64,000 nt of DNA from Ylistrum balloti. Taxonomy: Eukaryota. The stretch is from NCBI RefSeq assembly GCF_031769215.1, contig NW_026782690.1, forward strand, positions 62,001 through 126,000, given 5' to 3'. Shown in pieces: positions 1 to 48,830 of the stretch. Every line of letters starts with the position of its first letter. The stretch's first letter is position 1. A program made the translations under genes and the position numbers. The notes under the pieces are model-generated. The model worked only from the letters and a program-made list of their open reading frames with translations. It was not told the origin of the DNA and did not search any database.

Positions 1-712
1 GAATACTAGAGAAGTACCTGGTCTCGAGACCACAATCAGCGTCGCAGAGTGAATTTTCAATTTTATTTAGATTTTACTTGGAGACCAACTGTCTGATGAT
101 CGTCATCAGATTAGGTTAAAATGATCCGAGACACATTTCATAGAAAAAGCTTAACAACAGTAAACACTTTTCATTTACATTGAAATATTTTTTGGCTATA
201 TTTTTGTTTCGATATTTTTAATCAACATAGGTTGTAAAGATCTTTATGGGGAGATGTCGGAAATTCCTGGTGGATAAACAAAAAATATATTGTAACAAGG
301 GAAACCAAACTGTTATGCCCGCACCATAGTTTAAAAGAAACTGACTGCTTAAATGACAGCGCGAGTGTTGAGGGATTAGCTTTTGTGAAAAATACGCTGT
401 CTCACATGAAGTGCTATCAAACAAAACAGGCAATGCATGTACGTGCATTCGTGCATGATAAAATGAGCTCATACTGCTTAACCCATGACTCTGACAAACG
501 ATTAAAAAACAAGTTTTTGAGACCCAGAAAGTTTGTGACCGAATTTCTAAATGTTGTCATATTAAACAGATTTCGTTTTCAGAATTTAATAGATAGTCTA
601 GCAATTTGTCATTTTCAAATTAGGTTCCTTACAAAAAAGTTAATAGATATGTATGTATCTAAGTGGTTGACGTCTATTGCTCATTCCGATTATTTCCTTT
701 TTCAATTTAAAG

Positions 713-3700
713 GTGCGTCCAGATCAACCGACAGGAACGGTTACGGTGAATTTTAACGGCACAAAAGGTCACGAAATCGTTATTTCGTTGAAAAAGGGCG
801 ACGACAAACAAGAGAAAATGAAAATTTCAAAACTGAAGATAGAGGCATGTTTTGAATCAACAGGTCAGAATATTTCTTCTGCTGATACGAATATAGCTAT
901 ATATATTACCTTCCTACTTGCTAAGCATTTAGCATGACACGTCAATGGGTGTTCTTTGTAGCATAGATATAAATTATTATTTCACAATCATCATCGAGAT
1001 GTAATCATTTGATCTTATTTATATTTTAATATCAATAATATCATCAGCATTCAAACTAGAATGTACGTAACATTTCTTAAACCAACTAAAAATAATAACA
1101 AAATCAGCCATACTCTGTTTCTGTCATATTGGGAAGATCCATGTTGGTTCATGTTAAAGAGAAAGCCTTTAAATATGTTAGTTGATCTTTCTCAAAATAA
1201 ATTGAATTATAGTGGATATGAAGAGATCCAATATATTTCTTTAAAAATCATGATATTTTAAAAAAGGTACTTTGATCGATCCCTCATATTTTGTTTTTTT
1301 AAGGTAAAAATAGGTATATTTCATATTAGACAGCCTTTATTTCTAAGAGTAGGTTACAGCGCATTTCGTTTATTTTATCGATAATTTCCTGATGTAATGA
1401 CTGAGTGTGACCATGAGAGTGTATTGTATTTTACTTTCAGCATGTATATTAACGATCGTAACAAGCATAAATGCCAAGGAATATGTGTTGCTTACCGATA
1501 GCGACGGAGAATATTCGTCACCATTGGCTTCCGGTAACCTAGCAGGAGCTGCACGAAACTCTGACAACCAAGTGGAACTGACACTACACTTCCAGAGCGC
1601 AACCTTATATACCTTATCTGTGACTTTTGCTGAACTTAACTATACTGTGATGTATCAGGATAAACCACTCATGGTAAGTATTTGAAAAATTGGATCAGAT
1701 CCGTTACACCATCATAATATAACCATTTCTAATCCAAAGACTCATACCGTAATGTTCTTTTTTTGTGCAGGAGTAGAAGTATAAAATCGTTATCGCGATA
1801 AATACATGCGACGATTCCTGAGTTTCTTTAGATGGATTATAAATGTTTTATGCATTTAATCAATCTGTTAGACTATAGTTTAATTTCATAGTTTTACGTC
1901 CACCTGTTTAATCAGCGACTACGAAAGTAACAATTTTGAAAATTAATTAAAATTTTGCATTCCTGTTATGATAACTTATCACGTACATTAAATACAAACT
2001 ATACTTTCAATGTGAAATCATCTTATTAAGAATCATTATATCGTATCTTGATGTTTTAGTTAGTTTATAAGTCATGTTCTACTCCTTTTTTTATCCAGAC
2101 TTCGACGTTTTCATCCGATAACACATCAAATGACATTCACTTTGACGGCAAAATTACAAATATGAACGAATTGGTATTCTTGATATCACCTGCTACTGAT
2201 GGAAGTGAGCCTATATTCCAAATAACTAAAATAGTTGGTTGCATGGAAAAACAAGGTAAGAGCAAAATAATTGCATTAAGGTCGTGCTTTGAGAATACCG
2301 GCTATCCGTTATGCTCACCGACCACAATCTGACAACTAGCTTCATATCTAATATCAAAGTATCAGCAAATGTTATAAGCATTATCATGATTAAAGCAAAG
2401 TAATACGTCACTTTCAACATATTACCACCATTACATGGTTAGTTAAGGATATTATCGATTTTTACCGATATACTGGTAATTCCCACATCTCGTGATTAGC
2501 TCATGCATTGACTATTTTTGGAAACGGAAAACAACGCGGAATTTCGTAAGAATTACTTGATCTATTATCGCATATAGCATTTGTTATAATTGAGATTTAA
2601 AACAAATCGTTGTTTCATTTTTTGATGAATTATTTAAGAATCAGATGAACATTATTACGAATATTTGAAATATGTAAAGACAATTAACTCCACTTAATAC
2701 GAACCTCAGTGGCTAATTAATAGAACGTAAACATATTTCCCCAAGGGAAACTGAGATATTTAAAGGAAATTGTTATTTTTCACACCATTCCAAATTGTAG
2801 TCTATATATTTATTGACTAAGCTGCGCGATACCTAAAGTTGATACTGTTTTATCATCTACAGAGGTAACCACAACCATTGGTACACAGATAACAACACCA
2901 GTGACAGGGGAAACAACTGTCACTACATCATCAACAAGACGTTCAGCGCCTACAACGACAACACCGGCCGTAACCACATTTACCACTGGTACTTTCAGCT
3001 GATTCATTTACAAAAAAAAAGAGATACACATAGCAGTAAAATTATTCATAGGAAATTCTATGATATGAACCATATATACATATAGATGAAAGAACTTATT
3101 AACTCGCTAAGCATTAAATAAGATGCAGAAAAAGGCAAAAAGCGAAAAGACGTAATTATTTCTAAAAATATATGCATATAGATGTTTTTTTTCAGTCTCA
3201 TCTATGTTGGGCATTAGTTGAAAAGAATGTTTACTTTTAAAACAGGCACTCTATCCACCAGTCCAGCAATTACTACACGTAAGTAGCACTTGGTTTTAAA
3301 AAAAACACTTTATTTCACTTGTGTGGATCAGAAATTATCTTTCCTCATCAATAAATTATTATTAAAACGCTGAAAATATTAATTAGCTCTTCGTATTCTT
3401 GAATGTCTGTTCAGTTGTTGTACAGTCGCTACGGTCATTAACAGAAATAGTCGGATTACTATATAGATATTCATTCGATTACAAGAAAACCGTCGATTGC
3501 CAAATATATGTTAACGTATCCAAAATGCCACTGTTCCCCAATACTGGGATTCTGTGACAAAAGATACAATAGTCTTGGTGAATCAGCAATATATTTTGGT
3601 AAAACATTTGGTGTACACCAGTTTTATAATAAAAAAGTACAATGTCCCGACTGAGTTTTGAACCCTCCAGCATGAATCGAGAGGTTGTTGTAGTTCCTTG

Positions 3701-4662
3701 TTTCTTTAATGATAGTGAGCTTTATTCATTTTACAACAACTGCGAAGCAAGTTTCACCAACTTAAATTAATCACTCTTGATGGCACAAATAGAAGTGCGC
3801 GAAGGATCTTAATGTGGGAGAAAACCGGAGCACCCGGGGAAATCCCACGTGGTCGGGCAGGTGATCCCTTACCTTTTCACATTCATTCCGGGAATCGACC
3901 CCCTGACGGCTAGGTGAAACGCGAGTGCGTCACTACTGCGTCACCCGACCTTCCGAGTTTCTTGTTAAAAACTATACAGCTACGGTACCGTTACTTTATC
4001 AGCTATTTGCTACAAAGTACAATAATCGGGTAACATATGAAAATTCCGATATTAGCTTGCTATAAATAGGAAAAGGAGCCGTTAGGTTGTTGGAATTTTT
4101 AAAGTAGGGAATAATGAATTGATATTTCCGCATTGTTAACAAAATTGCGGATCTTGAGGAGCAGACGTCTTTGAACTTTAATTCAATAGCGAATGTCTCC
4201 ACAAATAAACCTTGTGCAATGTCCACGTGTGCTCAGATCATCTAAACTAATCAAGATGTACTCCGAACAGTTGTTGGTAATCACATTGTTTTAAGTGCGA
4301 TATTGAGTCTTCTCTACATATGAATTGTGTCATTATTGATATATCTGTATGTTCACCTTAAGTTCATGTAATACCATCGCAATAATTATTCTTTTTCAGC
4401 ATGTGCTCATACTACTATCGAAATGGAGCAAAATAGTCAGAATATCGAAATCACAGTTTTGAACAAAACAATGAAATACGGTGGAGATGCATTGATAAGT
4501 GAATTAGAACTTGATGATAACACGGAGACTGTTATGGCAGCACTAAAAGATACAGAAGCCGCTGATAACCCTGTGTTTAAAGTTTTCTTCGTTACCTATA
4601 ACACTGATGAAGTAATAGTTGAATTACGGACTAACACCGGAAATACTGTAGGGGAGTCAAAG
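713..4662 (+). CDS. Exon cassette copy 1 (6 exons, 963 nt = 321 aa)
   Basis: Exons 713-863 (VRPDQ...IEACFEST), 1441-1673 (CILTIV...DKPLM), 2099-2255 (TSTFSS...IVGCMEKQ), 2863-2988 (EVTTTIG...TTFTT), 3246-3278 (GTLSTSPAITT), 4400-4662 (CAHTTIEMEQ...TVGESK). Junction phases 1,0,1,1,1,0. Confidence 0.85.
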
Positions 4663-7600
4663 GTATAATATATACGGTAACCTCACATATACAAGACCAT
4701 CATTAATTGACCATTGTAGTACTTGAAAATTACCAACTGATAACTCAACTTTATATATAAGGTAGATGAAAGGTAATTTAACGTAGTGTGTATACATTTT
4801 TTTTTCAGCTTTGAAAAGAGTTTTTCCTTTATTCTTTTATTTCTTAGTTTCATACTGGTAAATGAGTAAAACCGATTGAAAACCTGGATGGTCGCACATG
4901 ATATCTAAGATATGTATTAAGAACAAAAAATAACACACAAAAAATGTATAAATTGTATTTGATGAAGTGTATTTGTCTAAGAAATCACCACGCATAAGAC
5001 CTTTCATGACATAAAGTGACTTCATTGACAGCTATTCCGCGCCTCTTTTAGTCATTCAAAATTCATTTATGAGTGGGCCCATCATGCTCCGAAGGGAAAT
5101 GTATAGTGTCAGGCATTAGATGGAGGGAAACCGATAGCATAAACGTGACAGGTGATTTTATTGCACCATTAGTCAGAGAGAGTACTGTTGGATTATAAAG
5201 AGAAGCATTTGGGTCAGTGGAGAGTTGGTGAAGAGCTATTTTCCGCCGATCCTGATAAAACAAATAAGAGGTGTCGCTGGTGTGTGTGCACCTAGATGAA
5301 TACTAGAGAAGTACCTGGTCTCGAGACCACAATCAGCGTCGCAGAGTGAATTTTCAATTTTATTTAGATTTTACTTGGAGACCAACTGTCTGATGATCGT
5401 CATCAGATTAGGTTAAAATGATCCGAGACACATTTCATAGAAAAAGCTTAACAACAGTAAACACTTTTCATTTACATTGAAATATTTTTTGGCTATATTT
5501 TTGTTTCGATATTTTGAATCAACATAGGTTGTAAAGATCTTTATGGGGAGATGTCGGAAATTCCTGGTGGATAAACAAAAAATATATTGTAACAAGGGAA
5601 ACCAAACTGTTATGCCCGCACCATAGTTTAAAAGAAACTGACTGCTTAAATGACAGCGCGAGTGTTGAGGAATTAGCTTTTGTGAAAAATACGCTGTCTC
5701 ACATGAAGTGCTATCAAACAAAACAGGCAATGCATGTACGTGCATTCGTGCATGATAAAATGAGCTCATACTGCTTAACCCATGACTCTGACAAACGATT
5801 AAAAAACAAGTTTTTGAGACCCAGAAAGTTTGTGACCGAATTTCTAAATGTTGTCATATTAAACAGATTTCGTTTTCAGAATTTAATAGATAGTCTAGCA
5901 ATTTGTCATTTTCAAATTAGGTTCCTTACAAAAAAGTTAATAGATATGTATGTATCTAAGTGGTTGACGTCTATTGCTCATTCCGATTATTTCCTTTTTC
6001 AATTTAAAGGTGCGTCCAGATCAACCGACAGGAACGGTTACGGTGAATTTTAACGGCACAAAAGGTCACGAAATCGTTATTTCGTTGAAAAAGGGCGACG
6101 ACAAACAAGAGAAAATGAAAATTTCAAAACTGAAGATAGAGGCATGTTTTGAATCAACAGGTCAGAATATTTCTTCTGCTGATACGAATATAGCTATATA
6201 TATTACCTTCCTACTTGCTAAGCATTTAGCATGACACGTCAATGGGTGATCTTTGTAGCATAGATATAAATTATTATTTCACAATCATCATCGAGATGTA
6301 ATCATTTGATCTTATTTATATTTTAATATCAATAATATCATCAGCATTCAAACTAGAATGTACGTAACATTTCTTAAACCAACTAAAAATAATAACAAAA
6401 TCAGCCATACTCTGTTTCTGTCATATTGGGAAGATCCATGTTGGTTCATGTTAAAGAGAAAGCCTTTAAATATGTTAGTTGATCTTTCTCAAAATAAATT
6501 GAATTATAGTGGATATGAAGAGATCCAATATATTTCTTTAAAAATCATGATATTTTAAAAAAGGTACTTTGATCGATCCCTCCTTTCCATATTTTGTTTT
6601 TTTAAGGTAAAAATAGGCATATTTCATATTAGACAGCCTTTATTTCTAAGAGTAGGTTACAGCACATTTCGTTTATTTTATCGATAATTTCCTGATGTAA
6701 TGACTGAGTGTGACCATGAGAGTGTATTGTATTTTACTTTCAGCATGTATATTAACGATCGTAACAAGCATAAATGCCAAGGAATATGTGTTGCTTACCG
6801 ATAGCGACGGAGAATATTCGTCACCATTGGCTTCCGGTAACCTAGCAGGAGCTGCACGAAACTCTGACAACCAAGTGGAACTGACACTACACTTCCAGAG
6901 CGCAACCTTATATACCTTATCTGTGACTTTTGCTGAACTTAACTATACTGTGATGTATCAGGATAAACCACTCATGGTAAGTATTTGAAAAATTGGATCA
7001 GATCCGTTACACCATCATAATATAACCATTTCTAATCCAAAGACTCATACCGTAATGTTCTTTTTTGTGCAGGAGTAGAAGTATAAAATCGTTATCGCGA
7101 TAAATACATGCGACGATTCCTGAGTTTCTTTAGATGGATTATAAATGTTTTATGCATTTAATCAATCTGTTAGACTATAGTTTAATTTCATAGTTTTACG
7201 TCCACCTGTTTAATCAGCGACTACGAAAGTAACAATTTTGAAAATTAATTAAAATTTTGCATTCCTGTTATGATAACTTATCACGTACATTAAATACAAA
7301 CTATACTTTCAATGTGAAATCATCTTATTAAGAATCATTATATCGTATCTTGATGTTTTAGTTAGTTTATAAGTCATGTTCTACTCCTTTTTTTTATCCA
7401 GACTTCGACGTTTTCATCCGATAACACATCAAATGACATTCACTTTGACGGCAAAATTACAAATATGAACGAATTGGTATTCTTGATATCACCTGCTACT
7501 GATGGAAGTGAGCCTATATTCCAAATAACTAAAATAGTTGGTTGCATGGAAAAACAAGGTAAGAGCAAAATAATTGCATTAAGGTCGTGCTTTGAGAATA

Positions 7601-10600
7601 CCGGCTATCCGTTATGCTCACCGACCACAATCTGACAACTAGCTTCATATCTAATATCAAAGTATCAGCAAATGTTATAAGCATTATCATGATTAAAGCA
7701 AAGTAATACGTCACTTTCAACATATTACCACCATTACATGGTTAGTTAAGGATATTATCGATTTTTACCGATATACTGGTAATTCCCACATCTCGTGATT
7801 AGCTCATGCATTGACTATTTTTGGAAACGGAAAACAACGCGGAATTTCGTAAGAATTACTTGATCTATTATCGCATATAGCATTTGTTATAATTGAGATT
7901 TAAAACAAATCGTTGTTTCATTTTTTGATGAATTATTTAAGAATCAGATGAACATTATTACGAATATTTGAAATATGTAAAGACAATTAACTCCACTTAA
8001 TACGAACCTCAGTGGCTAATTAATAGAACGTAAACATATTTCCCCAAGGGAAACTGAGATATTTAAAGGAAATTGTTATTTTTCACACCATTCCAAATTG
8101 TAGTCTATATATTTATTGACTAAGCTGCGCGATACCTAAAGTTGATACTGTTTTATCATCTACAGAGGTAACCACAACCATTGGTACACAGATAACAACA
8201 CCAGTGACAGGGGAAACAACTGTCACTACATCATCAACAAGACGTTCAGCGCCTACAACGACAACACCGGCCGTAACCACATTTACCACTGGTACTTTCA
8301 GCTGATTCATTTACAAAAAAAGAGATACACATAGCAGTAAAATTATTCATAGGAAATTCTATGATATGAACCATATATACATATAGATGAAAGAACTTAT
8401 TAACTCGCTAAGCATTAAATAAGATGCAGAAAAAGGCAAAAAGCGAAAAGACGTAATTATTTCTAAAAATATATGCATATAGATGTTTTTTTTCAGTCTC
8501 ATCTATGTTGGGCATTAGTTGAAAAGAATGTTTACTTTTAAAACAGGCACTCTATCCACCAGTCCAGCAATTACTACACGTAAGTAGCACTTGGTTTTAA
8601 AAAAAACCCACTTTATTTCACTTATGTGGATCAGAAATTATCTTTCCTCATCAATAAATTATTATTAAAACGCTGAAAATATTAATTAGCTCTTCGTATT
8701 CTTGAATGTCTGTTCAGTTGTTGTACAGTCGCTACGGTCATTAACAGAAATAGTCGGATTACTATATAGATATTCATTCGATTACAAGAAAACCGTCGAT
8801 TGCCAAATATATGTTAACGTATCCAAAATGCCACTGTTCCCCAATACTGGGATTCTGTGACAAAAGATACAATAGTCTTGGTGAATCAGCAATATATTTT
8901 GGTAAAACATTTGGTGTACACCAGTTTTATAATAAAAAAGTACAATGTCCCGACTGAGTTTTGAACCCTCCAGCATGAATCGAGAGGTTGTTGTAGTTCC
9001 TTGTTTCTTTAATGATAGTGAGCTTTATTCATTTTACAACAACTGCGAAGCAAGTTTCACCAACTTAAATTAATCACTCTTGATGGCACAAATAGAAGTG
9101 CGCGAAGGATCTTAATGTGGGAGAAAACCGGAGCACCCGGGGAAATCCCACGTGGTCGGGCAGGTGATCCCTTACCTTTTCACATTCATTCCGGGAATCG
9201 ACCCCCTGACGGCTAGGTGAAACGCGAGTGCGTCACTACTGCGTCACCCGACCTTCCGAGTTTCTTGTTAAAAACTATACAGCTACGGTACCGTTACTTT
9301 ATCAGCTATTTGCTACAAAGTACAATAATCGGGTAACATATGAAAATTCCGATATTAGCTTGCTATAAATAGGAAAAGGAGCCGTTAGGTTGTTGGAATT
9401 TTTAAAGTAGGGAATAATGAATTGATATTTCCGCATTGTTAACAAAATTGCGGATCTTGAGGAGCAGACGTCTTTGAACTTTAATTCAATAGCGAATGTC
9501 TCCACAAATAAACCTTGTGCAATGTCCACGTGTGCTCAGATCATCTAAACTAATCAAGATGTACTCCGAACAGTTGTTGGTAATCACATTGTTTTAAGTG
9601 CGATATTGAGTCTTCTCTACATATGAATTGTGTCATTATTGATATATCTGTATGTTCACCTTAAGTTCATGTAATACCATCGCAATAATTATTCTTTTTC
9701 AGCATGTGCTCATACTACTATCGAAATGGAGCAAAATAGTCAGAATATCGAAATCACAGTTTTGAACAAAACAATGAAATACGGTGGAGATGCATTGATA
9801 AGTGAATTAGAACTTGATGATAACACGGAGACTGTTATGGCAGCACTAAAAGATACAGAAGCCGCTGATAACCCTGTGTTTAAAGTTTTCTTCGTTACCT
9901 ATAACACTGATGAAGTAATAGTTGAATTACGGACTAACACCGGAAATACTGTAGGGGAGTCAAAGGTATAATATATACGGTAACCTCACATATACAAGAC
10001 CATCATTAATTGACCATTGTAGTACTTGAAAATTACCAACTGATAACTCAACTTTATATATAAGGTAGATGAAAGGTAATTTAACGTAGTGTGTATACAT
10101 TTTTTTTCAGCTTTGAAAAGAGTTTTTCCTTTATTCTTTTATTTCTTAGTTTCATACTGGTAAATGAGTAAAACCGATTGAAAACCTGGATGGTCGCACA
10201 TGATATCTAAGATATGTATTAAGAACAAAAAATAACACACAAAAAAATGTATAAATTGTATTTGATGAAGTGTATTTGTCTAAGAAATCACCACACATAA
10301 GACCTTTCATGACATAAAGTGACTTCATTGACAGCTATTCCGCGCCTCTTTTAGTCATTCAAAATTCATTTATGAGTGGGCCCATCATGCTCCGAAGGGA
10401 AATGTATAGTGTCAGGCATTAGATGGAGGGAAACCGATAGCATAAACGTGACAGGTGATTTTATTGCACCATTAGTCAGAGAGAGTACTGTTGGATTATA
10501 AAGAGAAGCATTTGGGTCAGTGGAGAGTTGGCATTTTCCGCCGATCCTGATAAAACAAATAAGAGGTGTCGCTGGTGTGTGTGCACCTAGATGAATACTA

Positions 10601-13600
10601 GAGAAGTACCTGGTCTCGAGACCACAATCAGCGTCGCAGAGTGAATTTTCAATTTTATTTAGATTTTACTTGGAGACCAACTGTCTGATGATCGTCATCA
10701 GATTAGGTTAAAATGATCCGAGACACATTTCATAGAAAAAGCTTAACAACAGTAAACACTTTTCATTTACATTGAAATATTTTTTGGCTATATTTTTGTT
10801 TCGATATTTTGAATCAACATAGGTTGTAAAGATCTTTATGGGGAGATGTCGGAAATTCCTGGTGGATAAACAAAAAATATATTGTAACAAGGGAAACCAA
10901 ACTGTTATGCCCGCACCATAGTTTAAAAGAAACTGACTGCTTAAATGACAGCGCGAGTGTTGAGGAATTAGCTTTTGTGAAAAATACGCTGTCTCACATG
11001 AAGTGCTATCAAACAAAACAGGCAATGCATGTACGTGCATTCGTGCATGATAAAATGAGCTCATACTGCTTAACCCATGACTCTGACAAACGATTAAAAA
11101 ACAAGTTTTTGAGACCCAGAAAGTTTGTGACCGAATTTCTAAATGTTGTCATATTAAACAGATTTCGTTTTCAGAATTTAATAGATAGTCTAGCAATTTG
11201 TCATTTTCAAATTAGGTTCCTTACAAAAAAGTTAATAGATATGTATGTATCTAAGTGGTTGACGTCTATTGCTCATTCCGATTATTTCCTTTTTCAATTT
11301 AAAGGTGCGTCCAGATCAACCGACAGGAACGGTTACGGTGAATTTTAACGGCACAAAAGGTCACGAAATCGTTATTTCGTTGAAAAAGGGCGACGACAAA
11401 CAAGAGAAAATGAAAATTTCAAAACTGAAGATAGAGGCATGTTTTGAATCAACAGGTCAGAATATTTCTTCTGCTGATACGAATATAGCTATATATATTA
11501 CCTTCCTACTTGCTAAGCATTTAGCATGACACGTCAATGGGTGATCTTTGTAGCATAGATATAAATTATTATTTCACAATCATCATCGAGATGTAATCAT
11601 TTGATCTTATTTATATTTTAATATCAATAATATCATCAGCATTCAAACTAGAATGTACGTAACATTTCTTAAACCAACTAAAAATAATAACAAAATCAGC
11701 CATACTCTGTTTCTGTCATATTGGGAAGATCCATGTTGGTTCATGTTAAAGAGAAAGCCTTTAAATATGTTAGTTGATCTTTCTCAAAATAAATTGAATT
11801 ATAGTGGATATGAAGAGATCCAATATATTTCTTTAAAAATCATGATATTTTAAAAAAGGTACTTTGATCGATCCCTCCTTTCCATATTTTGTTTTTTAAG
11901 GTAAAAATAGGCATATTTCATATTAGACAGCCTTTATTTCTAAGAGTAGGTTACAGCACATTTCGTTTATTTTATCGATAATTTCCTGATGTAATGACTG
12001 AGTGTGACCATGAGAGTGTATTGTATTTTACTTTCAGCATGTATATTAACGATCGTAACAAGCATAAATGCCAAGGAATATGTGTTGCTTACCGATAGCG
12101 ACGGAGAATATTCGTCACCATTGGCTTCCGGTAACCTAGCAGGAGCTGCACGAAACTCTGACAACCAAGTGGAACTGACACTACACTTCCAGAGCGCAAC
12201 CTTATATACCTTATCTGTGACTTTTGCTGAACTTAACTATACTGTGATGTATCAGGATAAACCACTCATGGTAAGTATTTGAAAAATTGGATCAGATCCG
12301 TTACACCATCATAATATAACCATTTCTAATCCAAAGACTCATACCGTAATGTTCTTTTTTGTGCAGGAGTAGAAGTATAAAATCGTTATCGCGATAAATA
12401 CATGCGACGATTCCTGAGTTTCTTTAGATGGATTATAAATGTTTTATGCATTTAATCAATCTGTTAGACTATAGTTTAATTTCATAGTTTTACGTCCACC
12501 TGTTTAATCAGCGACTACGAAAGTAACAATTTTGAAAATTAATTAAAATTTTGCATTCCTGTTATGATAACTTATCACGTACATTAAATACAAACTATAC
12601 TTTCAATGTGAAATCATCTTATTAAGAATCATTATATCGTATCTTGATGTTTTAGTTAGTTTATAAGTCATGTTCTACTCCTTTTTTTTTATCCAGACTT
12701 CGACGTTTTCATCCGATAACACATCAAATGACATTCACTTTGACGGCAAAATTACAAATATGAACGAATTGGTATTCTTGATATCACCTGCTACTGATGG
12801 AAGTGAGCCTATATTCCAAATAACGAAAATAGTTGGTTGCATGGAAAAACAAGGTAAGAGCAAAATAATTGCATTAAGGTCGTGCTTTGAGAATACCGGC
12901 TATCCGTTATGCTCACCGACCACAATCTGACAACTAGCTTCATATCTAATATCAAAGTATCAGCAAATGTTATAAGCATTATCATGATTAAAGCAAAGTA
13001 ATACGTCACTTTCAACATATTACCACCATTACATGGTTAGTTAAGGATATTATCGATTTTTACCGATATACTGGTAATTCCCACATCTCGTGATTAGCTC
13101 ATGCATTGACTATTTTTGGAAACGGAAAACAACGCGGAATTTCGTAAGAATTAGTTGATCTATTATCGCATATAGCATTTGTTATAATTGAGATTTAAAA
13201 CAAATCGTTGTTTCATTTTTTGATGAATTATTTAAGAATCAGATGAACATTATTACGAATATTTGAAATATGTAAAGACAATTAACTCCACTTAATACGA
13301 ACCTCAGTGGCTAATTAATAGAACGTAAACATATTTCCCCAAGGGAAACTGAGATATTTAAGGAAATTGTTATTTTTCACACCATTCCAAATTGTAGTCT
13401 ATATATTTATTGACTAAGCTGCGCGATACCTAAAGTTGATACTGTTTTATCATCTACAGAGGTAACCACAACCATTGGTACACAGATAACAACACCAGTG
13501 ACAGGGGAAACAACTGTCACTACATCATCAACAAGACGTTCAGCGCCTACAACGACAACACCGGCCGTAACCACATTTACCACTGGTACTTTCAGTTGAT

Positions 13601-16600
13601 TCATTTACAAAAAAAAAGAGATTCACATAGCAGTAAAATTATTCATAGGAAATTCTATGATATGAACCATATATACATATAGATGAAAGAACTTATTTAC
13701 TCGCTAAGCATTAAATAAGATGCAAAAAAGGCAAAAAGCGAAAAGACGTAATTATTTCTAAAAATATATGCATATAGATGTTTTTTTTCAGTCTCATCTA
13801 TGTTGGGCATTAATTGAAAAGAATATTTACTTTTAAAACAGGCACTCTATCCACCAGTCCACCAATTACTACACATTTGTAGACTTTGAACATAACCCAC
13901 TTTCTTTCACTTGTATTAAATCAGAATTTATCTGTATGTAGCTGAAAGAACATATTTACTAGCTGTTAGATGATTCAAAGGAAATACCATTTAATTAACA
14001 TACATGTAGTTAATAATAACATTGTAACGTGCCTTGCGAAGCATAAGATAAGACAAAATAGCGAAAATACAAGACCGTCAGTAGCCTTGTTTGATACCTA
14101 GAAAGATACGTATACAGATTTTTTTTTATCTTATAGCCTAATCTATGTTGGTCATTAATTTAAATTGATGTTTAAATTCTTTTTACATGTACACTTTCTA
14201 CGAGTTCCTCTATTCAGATACGTAGTTATCCCGTGTCGAAAAAACGCACAAACTTCTTCAACTTAATACATCTACTGCCTATATTTCACTGACATTTTAT
14301 AGATATGAAACCTTCATCAGTAAACAGTTATTCAAACATTTAAAATGTTGAATGACTCTATTATGTTAATGCATTCTTGAATGTCTCTTCCGCACACTGA
14401 AAAATTGAATGTTAATATATATTAATTAATAGAATAATGTTATTAAGGATATATAAAGGAAAGGACGGAGCATGCTTACTTCTATGTCATTAAAATTGAC
14501 ACGGTGTTTGGTAGCTAAAGAAACAAAGGTTTTAACGTTAACCAATTCCTGAGGCCCATCTTCATCCAAAATGTGATCGGCATAATAAAAAGATAGCATG
14601 ATGCATTATTTGCAATTTGTATAAACATTATAGCATACACTGGGAATTCATGGCACGTTGGCTTTTTTACATGGATATGAACGTATTGACATTTTGTGCA
14701 ATGTGAAGGAATATATATTAACATTAGCTTAAATTCTGTCGTTAAAAAAACACTAACACGATACACTAACTTGTTCACAAATGTGCGAAATTTTAGGTTA
14801 TTTTGTAACAATGATTGACTGATATAAAGGGATGGAAAATTGAACGGGAAAGTTAAACAATGACGAATGATGTATGCCAAGTAACACATCGTTTAGAATT
14901 ATGCTTGGAAAAAGAAATATTGTAAATCTCCTAAATGGTAATGATAAAGAGAAAAAAGTATGAAACCTCAATATTAAATTGATGCCAAGAGTGTGTTTTC
15001 CGCATGACCGTTTTGAAACTTCGCATTTACTGGCTTTTACAAACGCCTATATTGTGTAGTGTTGACTAAATTGCTGTAGGTTATTTACAGTATTTACAAA
15101 GGTAAAAGTAAGTAGACTAGACAAATACCTATGATAACATCATAATTAACCATATTCAGCAAAAATGCTCCTTTCATGTAATGTTTTTTTCCTGACTTCT
15201 TTGCTAAACACTGTTTAAATTTCACAATAAAGATTTTTTTATAAAGTTCTAATTCTAGTTTTCTTCGAAAATAAATATACTAGGCAAATAACTCCTTTAT
15301 CACATATGACGTTGAATTTGTTCAAGTTTTCGTGTTAGATAAAGGTACAATTTGTCATTAAAGAACGCGATTGTCATACACAATATTCAGATGTTATAAA
15401 ATTTGCAGGGACCATGTAATTAGCTTTAAAATGCACGAGAAACTCAACACTCAATAGGATATCATTGGAAAATGACATTTGATAATCAAATAAAAGCATT
15501 CCATTACAATATTAATAACCCCCCTCCCCTCCCCCCCCAAAAAAAAAAAACAAAAAACAAAACAAAATGCGTACTGTTCTTCGGCTAAGTCGAGATATAT
15601 AGGAGTCAACTAATAAAAGTCGATAGGGGTCAAACATACGTTTTACAAAGGAGAAATAATAACCTTTAAACTAATTGAATTTCATAATTGTCAATGTTTC
15701 AATATTTTCTAAAGAACTTGAAATGCACAAAATGTCTGGTTCGTGACACCTTCTCAATGAATAAAAACATCCTTTGGCAAAGCCTCCTCATGGCTTCAAG
15801 TCAACTAGTGGTAGGTATCACTAGTGGACTAAACCCAAAATTCAATCAGTTGGATAATTTGAATGCAAAGAAATTGCAAAAGACCCGTCAAGTGTACATA
15901 TTCTGAAGCTTGTCACTTTTCGAGGGTGTTGGTAACGGTTACGTCTTACCTAAGGAATTTGGGGCCATAAGTATTGTGTGCCTCCTGTAATACTACATGT
16001 TCTACAAAGATTTCTTTCATCGCTGTATATGCTTTTTTCGGGCTGTATGGCGTTTTATTTTTCCCCGACATGCATGATTCAGAATTCGAGCTACAATCTG
16101 TTTGTTTTGTTTCAAATGTTGCAGACGAAAATCATATTTCAGTTTTTGCATAGAAAGACAAAAACTCGAGGTATTAGCATGCGTAATTATATTTCGTATA
16201 AATCAGTAATTACGATAACAGTAGATTCGTTCATCATTGAAATATGATTGAAAGTAAATGATAGTTCACCTGTGTTTAAGACAATGAATTTGCCAAGTTG
16301 ACCGCAGAGAGAATCAACATTTCTAAACGCACCACAAAGCAAAGTATTCATAATGTTTATGTCATCAAAAACAATTTTAGAATTTGATTTGCGCAAAGAA
16401 AACAAAGCAACATGTACTACGGTGCCGGTCAAAACCGAAGTGGCCAGAACTGGTGTAGTATTGTGATAATTATTGTAATAGGCTATCTAGCAGTATCCGA
16501 TTAAAAATCTAAGAAAACTGGTTATCAAAACAAGACCATAAGTAATATAACTATAACAACAATTGATGTTTTAATGTCTCATCTTGTTCCAGGAACGATA

Positions 16601-25600: not shown

Positions 25601-27200
25601 ATGTGTACATAAAGATGAATGCGATTATTGTGTATTTGCGGACGGCACTAAAGTAAAGGTATGCACTTGCAATGAAGGTTGTACTGATTATTGGAAATAA
25701 TTCATGTTGTTTACATATTTCCCTGTTTCGTGTTTACCAATAATGATATCGAAATTGCTATGAGTTCGATATATATTAAGTGACAATCAACAAGAACATT
25801 TCGGTTACATGGCAACTTTGTTTAACATATCAACTTGATTCGTAGTTTGTTATTAGGTAGATGCATTGTGTAATTCGATTTGAGACGCACTTTAATTTAC
25901 CCTTAATTTAGTATTCCATATCAAGGATATTATTTTCGTTCTTTATAATGAACAGGAAGGAGAAGAATTTGAGAATCCATTAAACAAATGCGAAAGATGC
26001 ATATGCGAGAAAGGAGAAGCAATATGTAGCAGCAAATGTAATGAACCATCTGAGTGTATGGAGGTGAGATTCAAAACATTTTGCTTATCTGCTAGTTGCC
26101 TTATGCATATTATTTTTTTTCAGTTTATGAAGCTTAATATTTCTCAGGATTTTAATATATAGTAAAGTTGATGGTAAACGGTACCTGCATTCATAAAATG
26201 TCTGACCAACTAAACCTCAAACGCGCATGATCGATAATGATGATCCGTCGAAAGATAGCTATAATCAATCTTGTACGTATATTTTGATTCCGTGAAAAAC
26301 CCATATCTGTTCTATTATGTTCATTATCACAACAATTTGTTTATAGGGTGAGATTAAAGTGCTGGATGAAGATGGTTGCTGCCATGTATGCAAGAAAGGT
26401 AACCCTTTTGGAAACAAAATCATTAGAATTGAGCAGTATGTTGGTAGAATACGATAAAGCAACATACATTGCATGTTTGCAATTGAGAAAGAAAGTCTTA
26501 AACTTGCTCTTAAACATTATATCATTTGTTTTCGGGTCATGCTAGCACTTTTAGAGTAAAGCAACATTTTGAAGGACAATCGAATTTAATATAGAGTAAA
26601 TGACATTCCGTCTGTGTTTCTTTCAGATACCTGCCGTTTCCATTCAAAAACAGAAGTTGTGAAGGATTTCAGTCACCCGCCATATAGAAATTGTACAACG
26701 GGAACGAAAATAACTTATAATTATTGCTCGGGCGGATGTGGTGACAGCAGCCACTTCCCTAACGGTTTTGGAGTGAATGAATGTAAATGCTGTACATCTG
26801 AAAAGGTTCGACAGAGATTGATCAATATAACATGCAAAAGGCTTAATTCTGATTACGAGGATATCGCCACAACTATGACAATAAGTGAGCCCACATCATG
26901 CCATTGTAACGTATCACCGTGTCAACGTAAGTATCCTATATCATTATTCCATTAATAGATTGATCTATGTTCAGCTGAAAGTACCAATTTTTTTCCAAGT
27001 AACTTACATTTCCATTGTTCATAAACTGATTGGCCTCACGCTTTAATTGCCCCCAATGAAATGCAACGAGCATTCTTTTTTATAAAACAAATTGTCTTTA
27101 CTCCTTGAACTATATGAAAATATGAAAATTTGCTCTCGCCATACTCACGAAAAGCACTTTGCTGTAATAATTGTTTTTTTTTTTTTCAGCCCCTTCCTAA
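713..27200 (+). CDS. 3' portion (35 exons, ~1,679 aa, 5' end outside the window) of a secreted gel-forming mucin / SCO-spondin-like protein: [two-Cys domain A + two-Cys domain B + Thr-rich] repeats, PTS segment, 6 TSP1, 2 TIL, VWC-like modules, C-terminal cystine knot
   Basis: Manually spliced, all GT-AG and phase-compatible: 713-863, 1441-1673, 2099-2255, 2863-2988, 3246-3278, 4400-4662, 6010-6160, 6744-6976, 7402-7558, 8166-8291, 8547-8579, 9703-9965, 11305-11455, 12038-12270, 12697-12853, 13460-13585, 16593-16766, 18054-18086, 18814-18991, 20141-20190, 20797-20961, 21124-21264, 21471-21714, 21901-21944, 22529-22610, 22935-23084, 23705-23748, 24339-24506, 24641-24799, 25146-25298, 25468-25658, 25956-26063, 26347-26398, 26627-26926, 27190-27200 (TAA). 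The sum is 5,040 nt, divisible by 3, and the frame stays open. The family call rests on domain motifs; no database search was run. Confidence 0.88.
3715..3952 (-). mobile_element. tRNA-derived SINE with V/Meta-like conserved core (copy in cassette 1)
   Basis: The minus strand reads GGGTGACGCAGTAGTGACGC (A-box-like) ... GGGTCGATTCCC (B-box-like) ... GTGGGATTTCCCCGGGTGCTCCGGTTTTCTCCCACA (central core of the V-SINE type) ... GAATAAA tail. Family assignment is from memory and unchecked. Confidence 0.7.
6010..9965 (+). CDS. Exon cassette copy 2 (6 exons, 321 aa, same protein sequence as copy 1 as far as I can read)
   Basis: Exons 6010-6160, 6744-6976, 7402-7558, 8166-8291, 8547-8579, 9703-9965. 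Splice sites intact; offset 5,297-5,303 from copy 1. Confidence 0.85.
9018..9255 (-). mobile_element. Same SINE, duplicated with the cassette (copy 2)
   Basis: Matches 3715-3952 at offset 5,303. Confidence 0.7.
11305..13585 (+). CDS. Exon cassette copy 3 (partial, 4 intact exons)
   Basis: Exons 11305-11455, 12038-12270, 12697-12853, 13460-13585. One synonymous change seen (ACT>ACG near 12,825). The fifth mini-exon (13842-13874) has lost its GT donor. Confidence 0.82.
16593..18086 (+). CDS. Thr/Ser/Pro-rich mucin-type exons (16593-16766, 18054-18086)
   Basis: ttccag|GAACG...CACTG|gtatac encodes GTITQPTTTATPSTSLLTTTAG...IMTST. taatag|CCTC...GAAG|gtaaga encodes ASTTTVATTTE. Both are phase 1-1. 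Confidence 0.85.
18814..26398 (+). CDS. Cys-rich region: six thrombospondin type-1 repeats, two TIL domains and VWC-like modules (15 exons)
   Basis: TSP1 WSxWSxC...R.R motifs at 20797-20961 (WTEWSQCDKECDTGIRNRTR), 21124-21264, 22529-22610 + 22935-23084, 24339-24506 (WTQWGSCS), 24641-24799 (WSPWTNCSAECNSGFRNRTR) and 25146-25298 (WNDWSSCSVTCGSGTKSRTR). TIL-like Cys spacing at 21471-21714 and 25468-25658. CxxCxC VWC-like motifs at 18814-20190, 21901-21944 and 25956-26063. Confidence 0.9.
19805..19890 (+). mobile_element. Degenerate fragment of a common interspersed repeat (Penelope-associated terminal repeat-like)
   Basis: gagcaacagatgcttactcttgcggaaaacccgg resembles the frequent molluscan motif gcttacccttccggagcacc. 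Short and diverged; recalled from memory. Confidence 0.3.
26627..27200 (+). CDS. C-terminal cystine knot (CTCK) exon and terminal micro-exon with stop
   Basis: 26627-26926 encodes C...C...CSGGC...CKCC...C...CHC, the CxGxC/CC/CxC pattern of mucin/vWF CK domains. 27190-27200 follows a strong polypyrimidine acceptor and ends ...PPS-TAA. Confidence 0.88.
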
Positions 27201-46090: not shown

Positions 46091-46512
46091 TCCCCTTGTA
46101 CTCATTTAGGATATTCCGTGTAATTGTTTCTTTTGTTCATATATTCATATGTCACAAAACAGAAAGGTTTCAAATCTTAGGAAACATCGCCAATTACCTT
46201 TTGTTTTGTTTGAACTGATGTTTATTTATGGATGCAAATAATTGACTTTTTATGAGGGAATGTGATACTATTGAAAGCGTTTTAAGTATACAACTTTTAC
46301 TTATAATGAACATTACCTTGAAATCGTAGCTCAAAATCTTCCATTGAATCCAGGGAATCACCACACTGCGCATACATCCTGCAGATAACACAATATATCT
46401 ACAGATATAAACAGTTGTTGTCAATCATTTCAAATTATGCATTTTCAAATTTAAGACCTCGCCAATGGAGAGCATTTTCTTCCATATATTCTACTCGAGG
46501 ACATCTTAAACC

Positions 46513-48830
46513 AATAACACCCGCCAGGTCACGGCATACTGACAATGACACACGGCAGGTCACGTATGCATACAACAATACCCGCCAGGTCACGGTAAAC
46601 AAACAATGACATCCGGCCAGATCACGGTATACTGACATTTACCTATCCAGGTCTCGGTATACTGGAATTTACCTAGACACGTTAGCATGACACCCGGCCA
46701 GGTCACGGTATACTGACATTTACCTAGACACGTTAGCATGACACCCGGCCAGGTCACGGTATACAGACATTGACCTAGACACGTTAGCATGACACCTGGC
46801 CATGTCACGGTTTGCTGACATTTACCTAGACACGTTAGCATGACACCCGGCCAGGTCACGGTAAACTGACATTGACCTAGACACGTTAGCATGACACCTG
46901 GCCAGGTCACGGTTTGCTGACATTTACCTAGATACACTAGCTTGACACCCGGCCAGGTCACGGTATGCTGACATTTACCTAGATACACTAGCATGACACC
47001 CGGCCAGGTCAAGGTTTGCTAACATTTACCTAGCCAATTTAGCATGACAACCGGTCAGGTCACGGTATACTTACCATTACCTAGCCAGGTCACGGTATGC
47101 TGGCATTGACCTAGACACGTTAGCATGACACCCGGCCAGGTCACGGTATACTGACATTTACCATTAGCATGACACCCGGCCAGGTGACGGTATACTGACA
47201 TAAACCAAGACAAGTATGCATGACACCCGGCCAGGTCACGGTTTGCTGGCATTTACCTAGACACGTTAGCATGACACCCGGCCAGGTCACGGTATACTGA
47301 CATTTACCTAGATACGCTAGCATGACACCCGGCCAGGTGACGGTATACTGACATAAACCAAGACAAGTATGCATGACACCCGGCCAGGTCACGGTTTGCT
47401 GACATTTACCTAGACCATTTAGCATGACAACTGGTCAGGTCACGGTATACAGACATTTACCTAGACACGTTAGCATGGCACCCGGCCAGGTCACGATATA
47501 CTGACATTTACCTAAATACATTAGCATGACACCCGGCCAGGTCACGGTATACTGACATTTACCTCGACACGTTAGTATGACACCCGGCCAGGTCACGGTA
47601 TAATGGCATTGACCTCAACACGTTAGCATGACATCCGGCCAGGTCACGGTATACAGACATTGACCTAGACACGTTAGCATGACACCTGGTTATGTCACGG
47701 TTTGCTGACATTTACCTAGATACACTAGCATGACACCCGGCCAGGTCACAGTATGCTGACATTTACCTAGACAGTTTAGAATGACAACTGGTCAGGTCAC
47801 AGTATGCTGACATTTACCTAGACACGTTAGCATGGCACCCGGCCAGGTCACGGTATACAGACATTTACCTAGACAGTTTAGAATGACAACTGGTCAGGTC
47901 ACAGTATGCTGACATTTACCTAGACACGTTAGCATGGCACCCGGCCAGGTCACGATATACTGACATTTACCTAAATACATTAGCATGACACCCGGCCAGG
48001 TCACGGTATGCTGGCATTGACCTAGACACGTTAGCATGACACCCGGCCAGGTCACGGTATACTGGCATTTACCTCGACACGTTAGTATGACACCCGGCCA
48101 GGTCACGGTATGCTGACATTTACCTAGATACACTAGCATGACATCCGGCCAGGTCACGGTTTGCTGACATTTACCGAGACAATTTAGCATGACAACCGGT
48201 CAGGTCACGGTATACTTACCATTACCTAGCCAGGTCACGGTATACTGGCATTGACCTAGACAGTTTAGAATGACAACTGGTCAGGTCACAGTATGCTGAC
48301 ATTTACCTAGACACGTTAGCATGGCACCCGGCCAGGTCACGGTATGCTGACATTTACCTAAATACATTAGCATGACACCCGGCCTGGTCACGGTATACTG
48401 ACAATGACCTAGACACGTTAGCATGACACTCGGCCAGGTCACGGTATACTGACATTGACCTAGACACGTTAGCATGACACCCGGCCAGATCACGGTATAC
48501 TGACATTGACCTAGACACGTTAGCATGACACCCGGCCAGGTCACGGTTTGCTGACATTTACCTAGATACACTAGCATGACACCCGGCCAGGTCACGGTAT
48601 GCTGACATTTACCTAGATATACTAGCATGACACCCGGCCAGGTCACGGTATACTGACATTTACCTAGACAATTTAGCATGACAACCGGTCAGGTCACGGT
48701 ATACTTACCATTACCTAGCCAGGTCACGGTATACTGGCATTGACCTAGACACGTTAGCATGACACCCGGCCAGGTCACGGTACACTGACATTTACCTAGA
48801 CACGTTAGCATGACACCAAGCAAGGTCATG
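46513..48830. repeat. 51-bp minisatellite, ~45 units, with recurring variant units
   Basis: Consensus catttacctagacacgttagcatgacacccggccaggtcacggtatactga (51 nt). It accounts for all the VTWPGVMLTCLGKCQYT ORFs in the track. Confidence 0.96.

What the first reader, a model, noticed from the sequence alone, without database searches (positions are those of the whole stretch)
1..13874. A secreted-protein gene expanding by tandem duplication of a whole 5.3-kb, six-exon, in-frame cassette
The unit carries 963 coding nt (321 aa), and its junction phases close on themselves, so each added copy extends the protein in frame. Introns are as conserved as exons, implying very recent duplication or active homogenisation. 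The copies differ by more than homopolymer length: a 6-bp indel near 1,285 vs 6,582, a 9-bp indel near 5,230 vs 10,531, and scattered SNPs. This argues against a purely duplicated contig. Mucins typically expand within one PTS exon, whereas here folded domains, introns and a SINE are multiplied together. Inference: copy number is probably polymorphic and tunes the length or valency of a gel-forming or adhesive protein.
Basis: partly seen in the sequence, partly recalled or inferred. Interest (0 to 1): 0.75.

Follow-up and report, generated by a model that had tools for sequence, protein, structure and literature searches.

The report
Scallop mucin-like gene's repeated six-exon cassette
A scallop (Ylistrum balloti) gene for a mucin-like protein really does carry five almost identical tandem copies of a 5.3-kb block of six exons plus introns, each adding 321 amino acids in frame. 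It is a clean new example of a known way for genes to grow (as in human LPA or DMBT1), not a new mechanism.

Summary
The 5.3-kb unit is repeated 5.1 times over 27 kb (contig C833:48880-75933, which is window -13120 to 13874). Inner copies differ at only 0.06-0.28% of bases.

Each unit holds six GT-AG exons totalling 963 nt (321 aa), and their phases close. The exons match the public RefSeq model XP_060082502.1 ("mucin-2-like", Ylistrum balloti) residue for residue. That model already contains five cassettes.

Short-read contigs from three DNA runs collapse the array into one contig at about 6-9 times the depth of the flank, so it is not an assembly artefact. Transcript-like contigs confirm four splice joints, including the predicted 9965>11305. 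The joints that would prove more than one cassette in a single mRNA (e3>e4>e4b>e5) were not seen.

The Argopecten irradians relative has two cassettes that are only 28% identical to each other, so the scallop amplification is lineage-specific and recent, or homogenised.

An upstream 1.37-kb, two-exon PTS (Pro/Thr/Ser-rich) cassette is repeated about 19 times on the same strand. No VWD domain lies on the contig, so "gel-forming" is unproven. Copy-number polymorphism is suggested but not shown.

The scan noted a similar homogenised exon array (SRCR domains) elsewhere in this genome. Verdict: new member of a known kind.

The parts
1..5297 (+). Tandem unit, fourth copy of the array (c3 in my numbering). 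The array begins 13.1 kb upstream of the window at contig C833:48880.
5298..10592 (+). Tandem unit, fifth copy (c4). It differs from the preceding copy by 0.19% in SNPs plus 8 indels.
10593..13874 (+). Last, partial unit (c5p), ending exactly at the 3' end of the mini-exon remnant.
   Evidence: (contigs branch at 13874)
713..863 (+). Exon e1 (151 nt, phase 0 to 1), C-terminal third of domain A. Copies at 6010-6160 and 11305-11455.
   Evidence: The joints into and out of the 11305-11455 copy appear in transcript-like contigs.
1441..1673 (+). Exon e2 (233 nt, phase 1 to 0), first part of domain B. Copies at 6744-6976 and 12038-12270.
2099..2255 (+). Exon e3 (157 nt, phase 0 to 1), end of domain B. 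Copies at 7402-7558 and 12697-12853.
   Evidence: The acceptor at 12697 is confirmed.
2863..2988 (+). Exon e4 (126 nt, phase 1 to 1), Thr-rich linker. Copies at 8166-8291 and 13460-13585.
   Evidence: The donor at 13585, spliced to 16593, is confirmed.
3246..3278 (+). Mini-exon e4b (33 nt, phase 1 to 1), with a copy at 8547-8579. The remnant at 13842-13874 has one substitution and lacks a GT donor.
4400..4662 (+). Exon e5 (263 nt, phase 1 to 0), first two thirds of domain A. Copy at 9703-9965.
   Evidence: The joint 9965>11305 is confirmed.
3700..3950 (-). SINE-like interspersed repeat in the e4b-e5 intron, with a copy at about 9003-9253. A B-box-like motif lies on the minus strand. It is present in every unit, so it was inserted before the amplification.
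   Evidence: (at least 2,944 candidates, 80-86% identity) and the sequence. No Rfam match.
16593..26925 (+). Downstream exons of the same gene: a PTS exon joined to the last e4, then TSP1 x4, TIL x2, VWC-like and cystine-knot exons.

Best explanation
This is a real, evolutionarily very young (or continuously homogenised) tandem amplification of a 5.3-kb genomic block inside a Ylistrum balloti mucin-like gene (RefSeq XP_060082502.1).

What the block contains. It carries six exons whose phases close on themselves. Each extra copy therefore adds 321 residues in frame: two Cys-bounded domains of about 135 aa (A = e5+e1, B = e2+e3) followed by a Thr-rich linker (e4+e4b).

How it most likely arose (inferred). 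The ancestral gene had one A-B module flanked on both sides by similar linker segments of about 484 bp, spanning unit positions 2795-3278. Unequal homologous recombination between these segments, and later between whole units, produced 5 cassettes. That process left the two outermost copies the most diverged, and left the last mini-exon without its donor, so the final e4 splices straight to the downstream PTS exon.

Consequence (inferred). The result is a longer protein displaying five identical A-B modules on glycosylated spacers, with a C-terminal cystine knot that could dimerise it. An upstream 1.37-kb, two-exon PTS cassette repeated about 19 times on the same strand suggests this is the usual growth mode at this locus.
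For: - The array is 5.1 copies over 27,054 bp.
- Inner copies differ by 0.06-0.28% in SNPs and edge copies by 0.7-0.9%. Variants are shared by neighbouring copies.
- All six exons are GT-AG, sum to 963 nt, and match P0001 exactly at 321-aa periodicity.
- In three DNA runs from two studies, the collapsed array contig has word depth 80/90/49 against 9.2/13.7/7.8 for the flank. At 13874 a high-depth path continues into the unit and a low-depth path leaves to the flank.
- e5 and e2 occur nowhere else in the genome, so the depth does not come from dispersed copies.
- Spliced contigs in run X6 confirm 9965>11305, 11455>12038, 12270>12697 and 13585>16593.
- The Argopecten irradians protein XP_069111486.1 has the same A-B-linker architecture twice. 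Its cassettes are 28% identical to each other and 36% identical to the Y. balloti cassette over the full 268 aa, with the four Cys conserved.
- The last e4b has lost its donor.
Against: - No read or contig spans the array, so the exact copy number (5 assembled, depth suggesting about 6-9) is uncertain.
- The joints e3>e4, e4>e4b and e4b>e5 were not among the contigs shown, so transcript inclusion of several cassettes rests on the RefSeq model and on the A. irradians architecture.
- Recent amplification cannot be separated from an old array kept uniform by conversion or unequal exchange.
- Variants are too few to show selection on the exons: 1 synonymous SNP in exons out of about 19 SNPs among inner copies.
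- The function of the A/B domains is unknown, with no Pfam or PDB relative.
Confidence: 0.8

Rival explanations
1. The array is old and is kept nearly identical by concerted evolution (gene conversion and repeated unequal crossing-over), rather than being a recent burst of duplication.
For: Edge copies are several-fold more diverged than inner copies, the classic signature of homogenisation in the array centre. The neighbouring 1.37-kb array shows the same gradient: 98.95% identity between adjacent copies, falling to 89% between the ends. Another gene in this genome has homogenised exon arrays (s1-262791).
Against: The A. irradians cassettes have diverged to 28% identity with no sign of homogenisation. 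c1 and c2 differ by only 3 SNPs in 5.3 kb, below the roughly 0.4-0.5% difference between individuals seen in the flank.
Confidence: 0.25
2. The genomic array is real, but mature mRNAs usually carry fewer cassettes. All linker junctions are phase 1, so skipping whole cassettes keeps the frame, and protein valency would then be set by splicing rather than by copy number.
For: The e4 donor, the e4b acceptor and donor, the e5 acceptor and the downstream PTS acceptor are all phase 1. The joints diagnostic of more than one cassette were not seen in X6. A. irradians isoforms X1-X7 differ by in-frame skipping of 30-99-aa PTS segments. The idea was raised for chicken Muc13 (PMC1552070).
Against: All copies have identical, good splice sites. 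The RefSeq model includes all five cassettes. In A. irradians the folded cassettes are constant in all seven isoforms.
Confidence: 0.12
3. This is an assembly artefact: a single or double cassette over-expanded by the assembler.
For: The copies differ partly in homopolymer lengths, and no spanning read was examined.
Against: Depth is 6-9 times the flank in three runs from two studies, with a branch at the array end. The variants are structured, neighbour-shared SNPs and multi-base indels. No second contig carries these exons.
Confidence: 0.03

Closest known systems
Human LPA kringle IV type 2 (KIV-2) repeat
   Same: A tandem unit of about 5.5 kb holding whole exons plus introns, in frame, with near-identical copies. 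Each copy adds one folded disulphide-bonded domain to a secreted protein (PMC4378929, PMC11515395).
   Different: KIV-2 has two exons per unit and 1 to more than 40 copies, with proven polymorphism. Here there are six exons and two domains plus a mucin linker per unit, about 5 copies, and polymorphism is untested. The proteins are unrelated.
DMBT1 / gp340 SRCR-SID exon arrays, and the SRCR-mucin gene of this same genome (s1-262791)
   Same: Frame-neutral domain exons alternate with Ser/Thr-rich spacer exons in homogenised tandem arrays inside a mucin-like gene. The DMBT1 part is from my own knowledge. The scallop gene comes from the scan's earlier report and was not re-tested here.
   Different: In those genes one exon equals one domain. 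Here each domain is split over two exons and the unit spans six exons and a SINE-like element. The A/B domains have no known family.
Chicken Muc13 multi-exon PTS domain (PMC1552070)
   Same: A mucin whose repeat units are separate, nearly identical exons rather than one large PTS exon. The upstream 1.37-kb x ~19 array here is the same design.
   Different: Muc13 repeats only PTS exons. Here folded domains are repeated as well.
Gel-forming mucins (MUC2/5AC/5B type)
   Same: Long PTS regions interrupted by small Cys-containing globular domains (compare CysD), and a C-terminal TIL/VWC/cystine-knot part. RefSeq names the gene 'mucin-2-like'.
   Different: No VWD domain on the contig or in either species' model. 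There are TSP1 repeats instead. The PTS and the interrupting domains are encoded by many exons.

Membership tests
Coding multi-exon tandem cassette (LPA KIV-2 / DMBT1 type intragenic array) | The repeat unit contains two or more complete exons with their introns | tested here: met
   Six GT-AG exons per 5.3-kb unit
Coding multi-exon tandem cassette (LPA KIV-2 / DMBT1 type intragenic array) | Unit coding length is a multiple of 3 and the junction phases are compatible | tested here: met
   963 nt. The phase-1 e4b donor meets the phase-1 e5 acceptor, and the split codons translate as in P0001.
Coding multi-exon tandem cassette (LPA KIV-2 / DMBT1 type intragenic array) | Near-identity of copies, including introns | tested here: met
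   0.06-0.28% SNP divergence between inner copies
Coding multi-exon tandem cassette (LPA KIV-2 / DMBT1 type intragenic array) | Several cassettes present in one mature mRNA | tested here: inconclusive
   Four joints are confirmed, but not e3>e4>e4b>e5. The RefSeq model has five cassettes.
Coding multi-exon tandem cassette (LPA KIV-2 / DMBT1 type intragenic array) | Copy number varies between individuals | tested here: inconclusive
   Contig-depth ratios of 8.7, 6.6 and 6.3 against 5 assembled copies. Contig depth is only a rough measure.
Gel-forming mucin | N-terminal VWD-C8-TIL assemblies | tested here: not met
   No PF00094 match on contig C833 among 77 genome matches and none in P0001 or P0002. 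The 5' end of the gene is not assembled, so absence is not proven.
Gel-forming mucin | Long PTS (Pro/Thr/Ser-rich) region | tested here: met
   Thr-rich e4/e4b linkers, the PTS exon at 16593, and the upstream PTS exon array
Gel-forming mucin | C-terminal cystine-knot domain | tested here: inconclusive
   PF00007 scores E=0.00098 and 19.8 bits, below the 24-bit cut-off. The cysteine pattern is conserved in A. irradians.

The most novel reading that the evidence does not exclude
The amplified module is itself a recent chimera. Its A domain is closer to the first A. irradians cassette (43% vs 37%) and its B domain to the second (37% vs 30%). An unequal exchange may therefore have fused A1 to B2, deleting B1-linker-A2, and this new module was then amplified. 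Its copy number now segregates in the population, setting the valency of an undescribed, Pectinidae-restricted, possibly carbohydrate-binding domain pair in scallop mucus.
Probability: 0.2. Interest if true: 0.55.

Novelty: new member of a known kind. Interest (0 to 1): 0.35.

Why it matters
It gives a clean invertebrate example of a protein growing by whole exon-intron cassettes, folded domains included. The frame bookkeeping, breakpoints and relative age can all be read from the sequence. Next to it on the same strand lies a second array that builds the PTS region from small exons.

This is useful for people studying mucin evolution and for annotators, because such arrays break assemblies and gene models. 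Here the RefSeq model is cut at its 5' end and the contig starts inside PTS repeats. The finding also flags an uncharacterised two-domain module restricted so far to scallops. It does not reveal a new mechanism.

Tried and rejected
Searches that found nothing useful:
- Pfam on the single exons gave nothing above cut-off. The SoxZ, HAD_SAK_1 and CbiG_N scores on P0001 are sums of five weak repeats with no stretch passing on its own, so I rejected them.
- BLASTP of e1 against e3 and of e5 against e2 found nothing. Smith-Waterman with shuffles gives only p=0.025 for e1/e3. A-B homology is weak overall: z=3.3 and 2.9 in A. irradians, not significant in Y. balloti.
- No diverged paralogous exons on the contig or in the genome.
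- The word-based protein search with the e5 ORF found no candidate. With P0002 region 253-826 it returned only P0002 itself.
- The big HMMER search found only P0001, P0002 and a bacterial repeat protein P0003 at E=7.6e-4, which I treat as chance.
- ESM Atlas scores were at most 0.83, pointing to F5/8-type-C, CBM-like and FlaA clusters. This is below the level at which shuffled proteins also score, so it is a lead only. The first Atlas call failed on length.
- The PDB sequence search matched only the TSP1 and TIL parts.
- Rfam found nothing on the SINE-like element.
- tblastn of the A. irradians N-terminal PTS region against the contig found nothing with composition correction.

Steps not done:
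- No RNA run was listed. Run X6 is labelled 'DNA?' but behaves like cDNA contigs.
- The spliced (joined) cassette was not sent to any search or fold tool. Exons were searched by reference, and the public RefSeq protein served as the joined model.
- The A/B fold was therefore not predicted. P0001 and P0002 also exceed the 1,200-aa limit.
Full report
**Observation**

The direct repeat is real. Window 1-5297, 5298-10592 and 10593-~13900 align at 99.45% and 98.7%.

The window is G000:C833:62001-126000. Reading the 62 kb upstream shows that the array begins at contig 48880, so the window start cuts it. In full it spans contig 48880-75933, which is 27,054 bp or 5.1 units.

A multiple alignment of the six (partial) copies gives these SNP divergences:
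- 0.06-0.28% between the four inner copies;
- 0.7-0.9% between inner copies and the first or last copy.

Many variants are shared by neighbouring copies (for example T,T,T,G,G at unit position 219). These are paralogous sequence variants, not random error.

**Exons**

A HMMER search with the e5 exon, given by reference, returned P0001. This is XP_060082502.1, "mucin-2-like", Ylistrum balloti, encoded on a 257,202-bp contig, the same length as contig C833.

I checked exon by exon against it. Each unit has six GT-AG exons:

| Exon | Window position | Length (nt) | Phase in/out |
|---|---|---|---|
| e1 | 713-863 | 151 | 0/1 |
| e2 | 1441-1673 | 233 | 1/0 |
| e3 | 2099-2255 | 157 | 0/1 |
| e4 | 2863-2988 | 126 | 1/1 |
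| e4b | 3246-3278 | 33 | 1/1 |
| e5 | 4400-4662 | 263 | 1/0 |

The total is 963 nt, or 321 aa. All peptides and split codons recur in P0001 every 321 residues, five times.

The joined cassette was not sent to any search or fold tool. The public protein served as the joined model.

**Is the array an assembly artefact?**

No RNA run was listed. One lay of four runs on window 9650-15649 was nonetheless informative.

In DNA runs X1, X2 and X5 (two studies, two organism labels) the unit is a single collapsed contig. Its word depth is 79.9, 90.1 and 48.9, while the flank contig (13832-15516) has 9.15, 13.7 and 7.76. The ratios are 8.7, 6.6 and 6.3.

At 13874 the graph branches. A high-depth piece continues with GTAAGTAGC..., the intron of the inner copies. 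The low-depth piece goes into the flank.

e5 and e2 occur nowhere else in the genome, so the excess depth is the array itself.

Contig depth is a rough measure, and one of the studies may be the assembly's own sample. Even so, a single-copy locus is excluded. The true number may be somewhat above the assembled five.

**Transcripts**

Run X6 (19 M letters, labelled "DNA?") gave exon-only contigs with GT..AG joints:
- 11455>12038 (e1>e2);
- 12270>12697 (e2>e3);
- a loose end showing the last e4 (donor at 13585) spliced to the PTS exon at 16593, in frame.

So the exons are transcribed and spliced as modelled.

The e5>e1 joint does not prove more than one cassette, however. The true repeat limits are unit positions 2795 and 3278, and a single ancestral module would be e4'-e4b'-e5-e1-e2-e3-e4. 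Only e3>e4>e4b>e5 is diagnostic, and it was not among the contigs shown.

**Breakpoints and mechanism**

The segment 2795-3278 (e4, its intron and e4b) occurs six times; the rest of the unit occurs five times. The first and last of these six segments are the most diverged. They share states (positions 2999, 3101, 3128) that differ from the four inner copies.

In the last copy the e4b remnant (13842-13874) is followed by AT instead of GT. This explains why e4 there splices to the downstream exon.

I infer that unequal homologous exchange between two pre-existing linker segments flanking one A-B module produced the first duplication, followed by further exchanges between whole units.

The SINE-like element at 3700-3950 has at least 2,944 genomic candidates at 80-86% identity and a B-box-like motif on the minus strand. 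It is in every unit, so it predates the amplification.

**Gene context**

Downstream + strand exons encode TSP1 (46 bits) and TIL twice (above cut-off). They also give a sub-threshold cystine knot (E=0.00098) and VWC-like Cys patterns.

Upstream, contig 13387-39207 is a second array on the same strand. Its unit is about 1,373 bp, repeated 18.8 times, with 98.95% identity between neighbours and 89% between the ends. Each unit holds two Thr/Ser-rich open frames with good phase 1-1 splice sites (117 + 246 nt). These exons are inferred, without RNA support.

The contig starts inside PTS repeats and the RefSeq model starts inside the first e5. The 5' end, including any signal peptide, is therefore missing.

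No VWD domain lies on the contig or in the models. "Gel-forming mucin" is not established.

**Comparison with another scallop**

P0002 (Argopecten irradians XP_069111486.1, 1,666 aa) has the same C-terminus and two A-B-linker cassettes.

The Y. balloti 268-aa A-B part aligns end to end with each of them at 36% identity, with the four cysteines conserved. The two A. irradians cassettes are only 28% identical to each other. The module is therefore old and real, and the five identical copies are specific to the Y. balloti lineage.

Domain A is closer to A1 (43% vs 37%) and domain B to B2 (37% vs 30%). This is a weak hint of a chimeric origin.

A. irradians isoforms X1-X7 differ only by in-frame skipping of 30-99-aa PTS segments. 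The folded cassettes are constant.

The A/B domains have no Pfam or PDB relative. Atlas leads towards CBM or galactose-binding-like domains score at most 0.83 and are not evidence.

**Known kinds**

Multi-exon in-frame tandem cassettes are well known:
- LPA KIV-2, a 5.5-kb unit (PMC4378929, PMC11515395);
- DMBT1 SRCR arrays (my own knowledge);
- chicken Muc13, whose PTS repeats are separate exons (PMC1552070).

The scan has already reported homogenised SRCR exon arrays elsewhere in this genome.

**Verdict**

It is a new member of a known kind, of moderate-to-low interest.

Noticed in passing
Contig C833:13387-39207 (L010-L013; 22.8-48.6 kb upstream of the window): A second tandem array on the same strand. 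The unit is about 1,373 bp, repeated 18.8 times, and each unit has two Thr/Ser-rich open frames with phase 1-1 GT-AG sites (117 + 246 nt, or 121 aa per unit). Identity is 98.95% between neighbours and falls to 89% between the ends. It is probably the PTS region of the same gene and is not in the RefSeq model.
   Followed up: partly
Contig C833:1-4716 (L015, L014): The contig begins inside Thr/Ser-rich repeats, with a 3.1-kb direct repeat at 93% identity (1-1638 against 3097-4716). The assembly probably broke inside this gene, so its 5' end is missing.
   Followed up: no
window 46300-48700, minus strand: A GC-richer stretch (45%) with long open frames made of a degenerate repeat of about 18 aa ('QYTVTWPGVMLTCLGKC'). 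It may be a tandem minisatellite or a repeat protein.
   Followed up: no
Contig C833:42546-43487 (L010), minus strand: Open frames resembling a Tc1/mariner-type transposase (DDE-like motif '...FQQDNAPAHTS...'). They lie between the PTS array and the cassette array, presumably within an intron.
   Followed up: no
P0001 and P0002 (proteins): The A and B domains (about 137 and 130 aa, each bounded by two conserved Cys) were found only in Y. balloti and Argopecten irradians among 1.84 billion cluster representatives. They look like a scallop-restricted, unnamed domain pair.
   Followed up: partly
Contig C833:6940-7323 (L014:4940-5323), + strand: A 128-aa open frame that starts after a Thr-rich stretch with '...TTTHEC' and has no Pfam match. 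It may be another globular module of the same gene.
   Followed up: no
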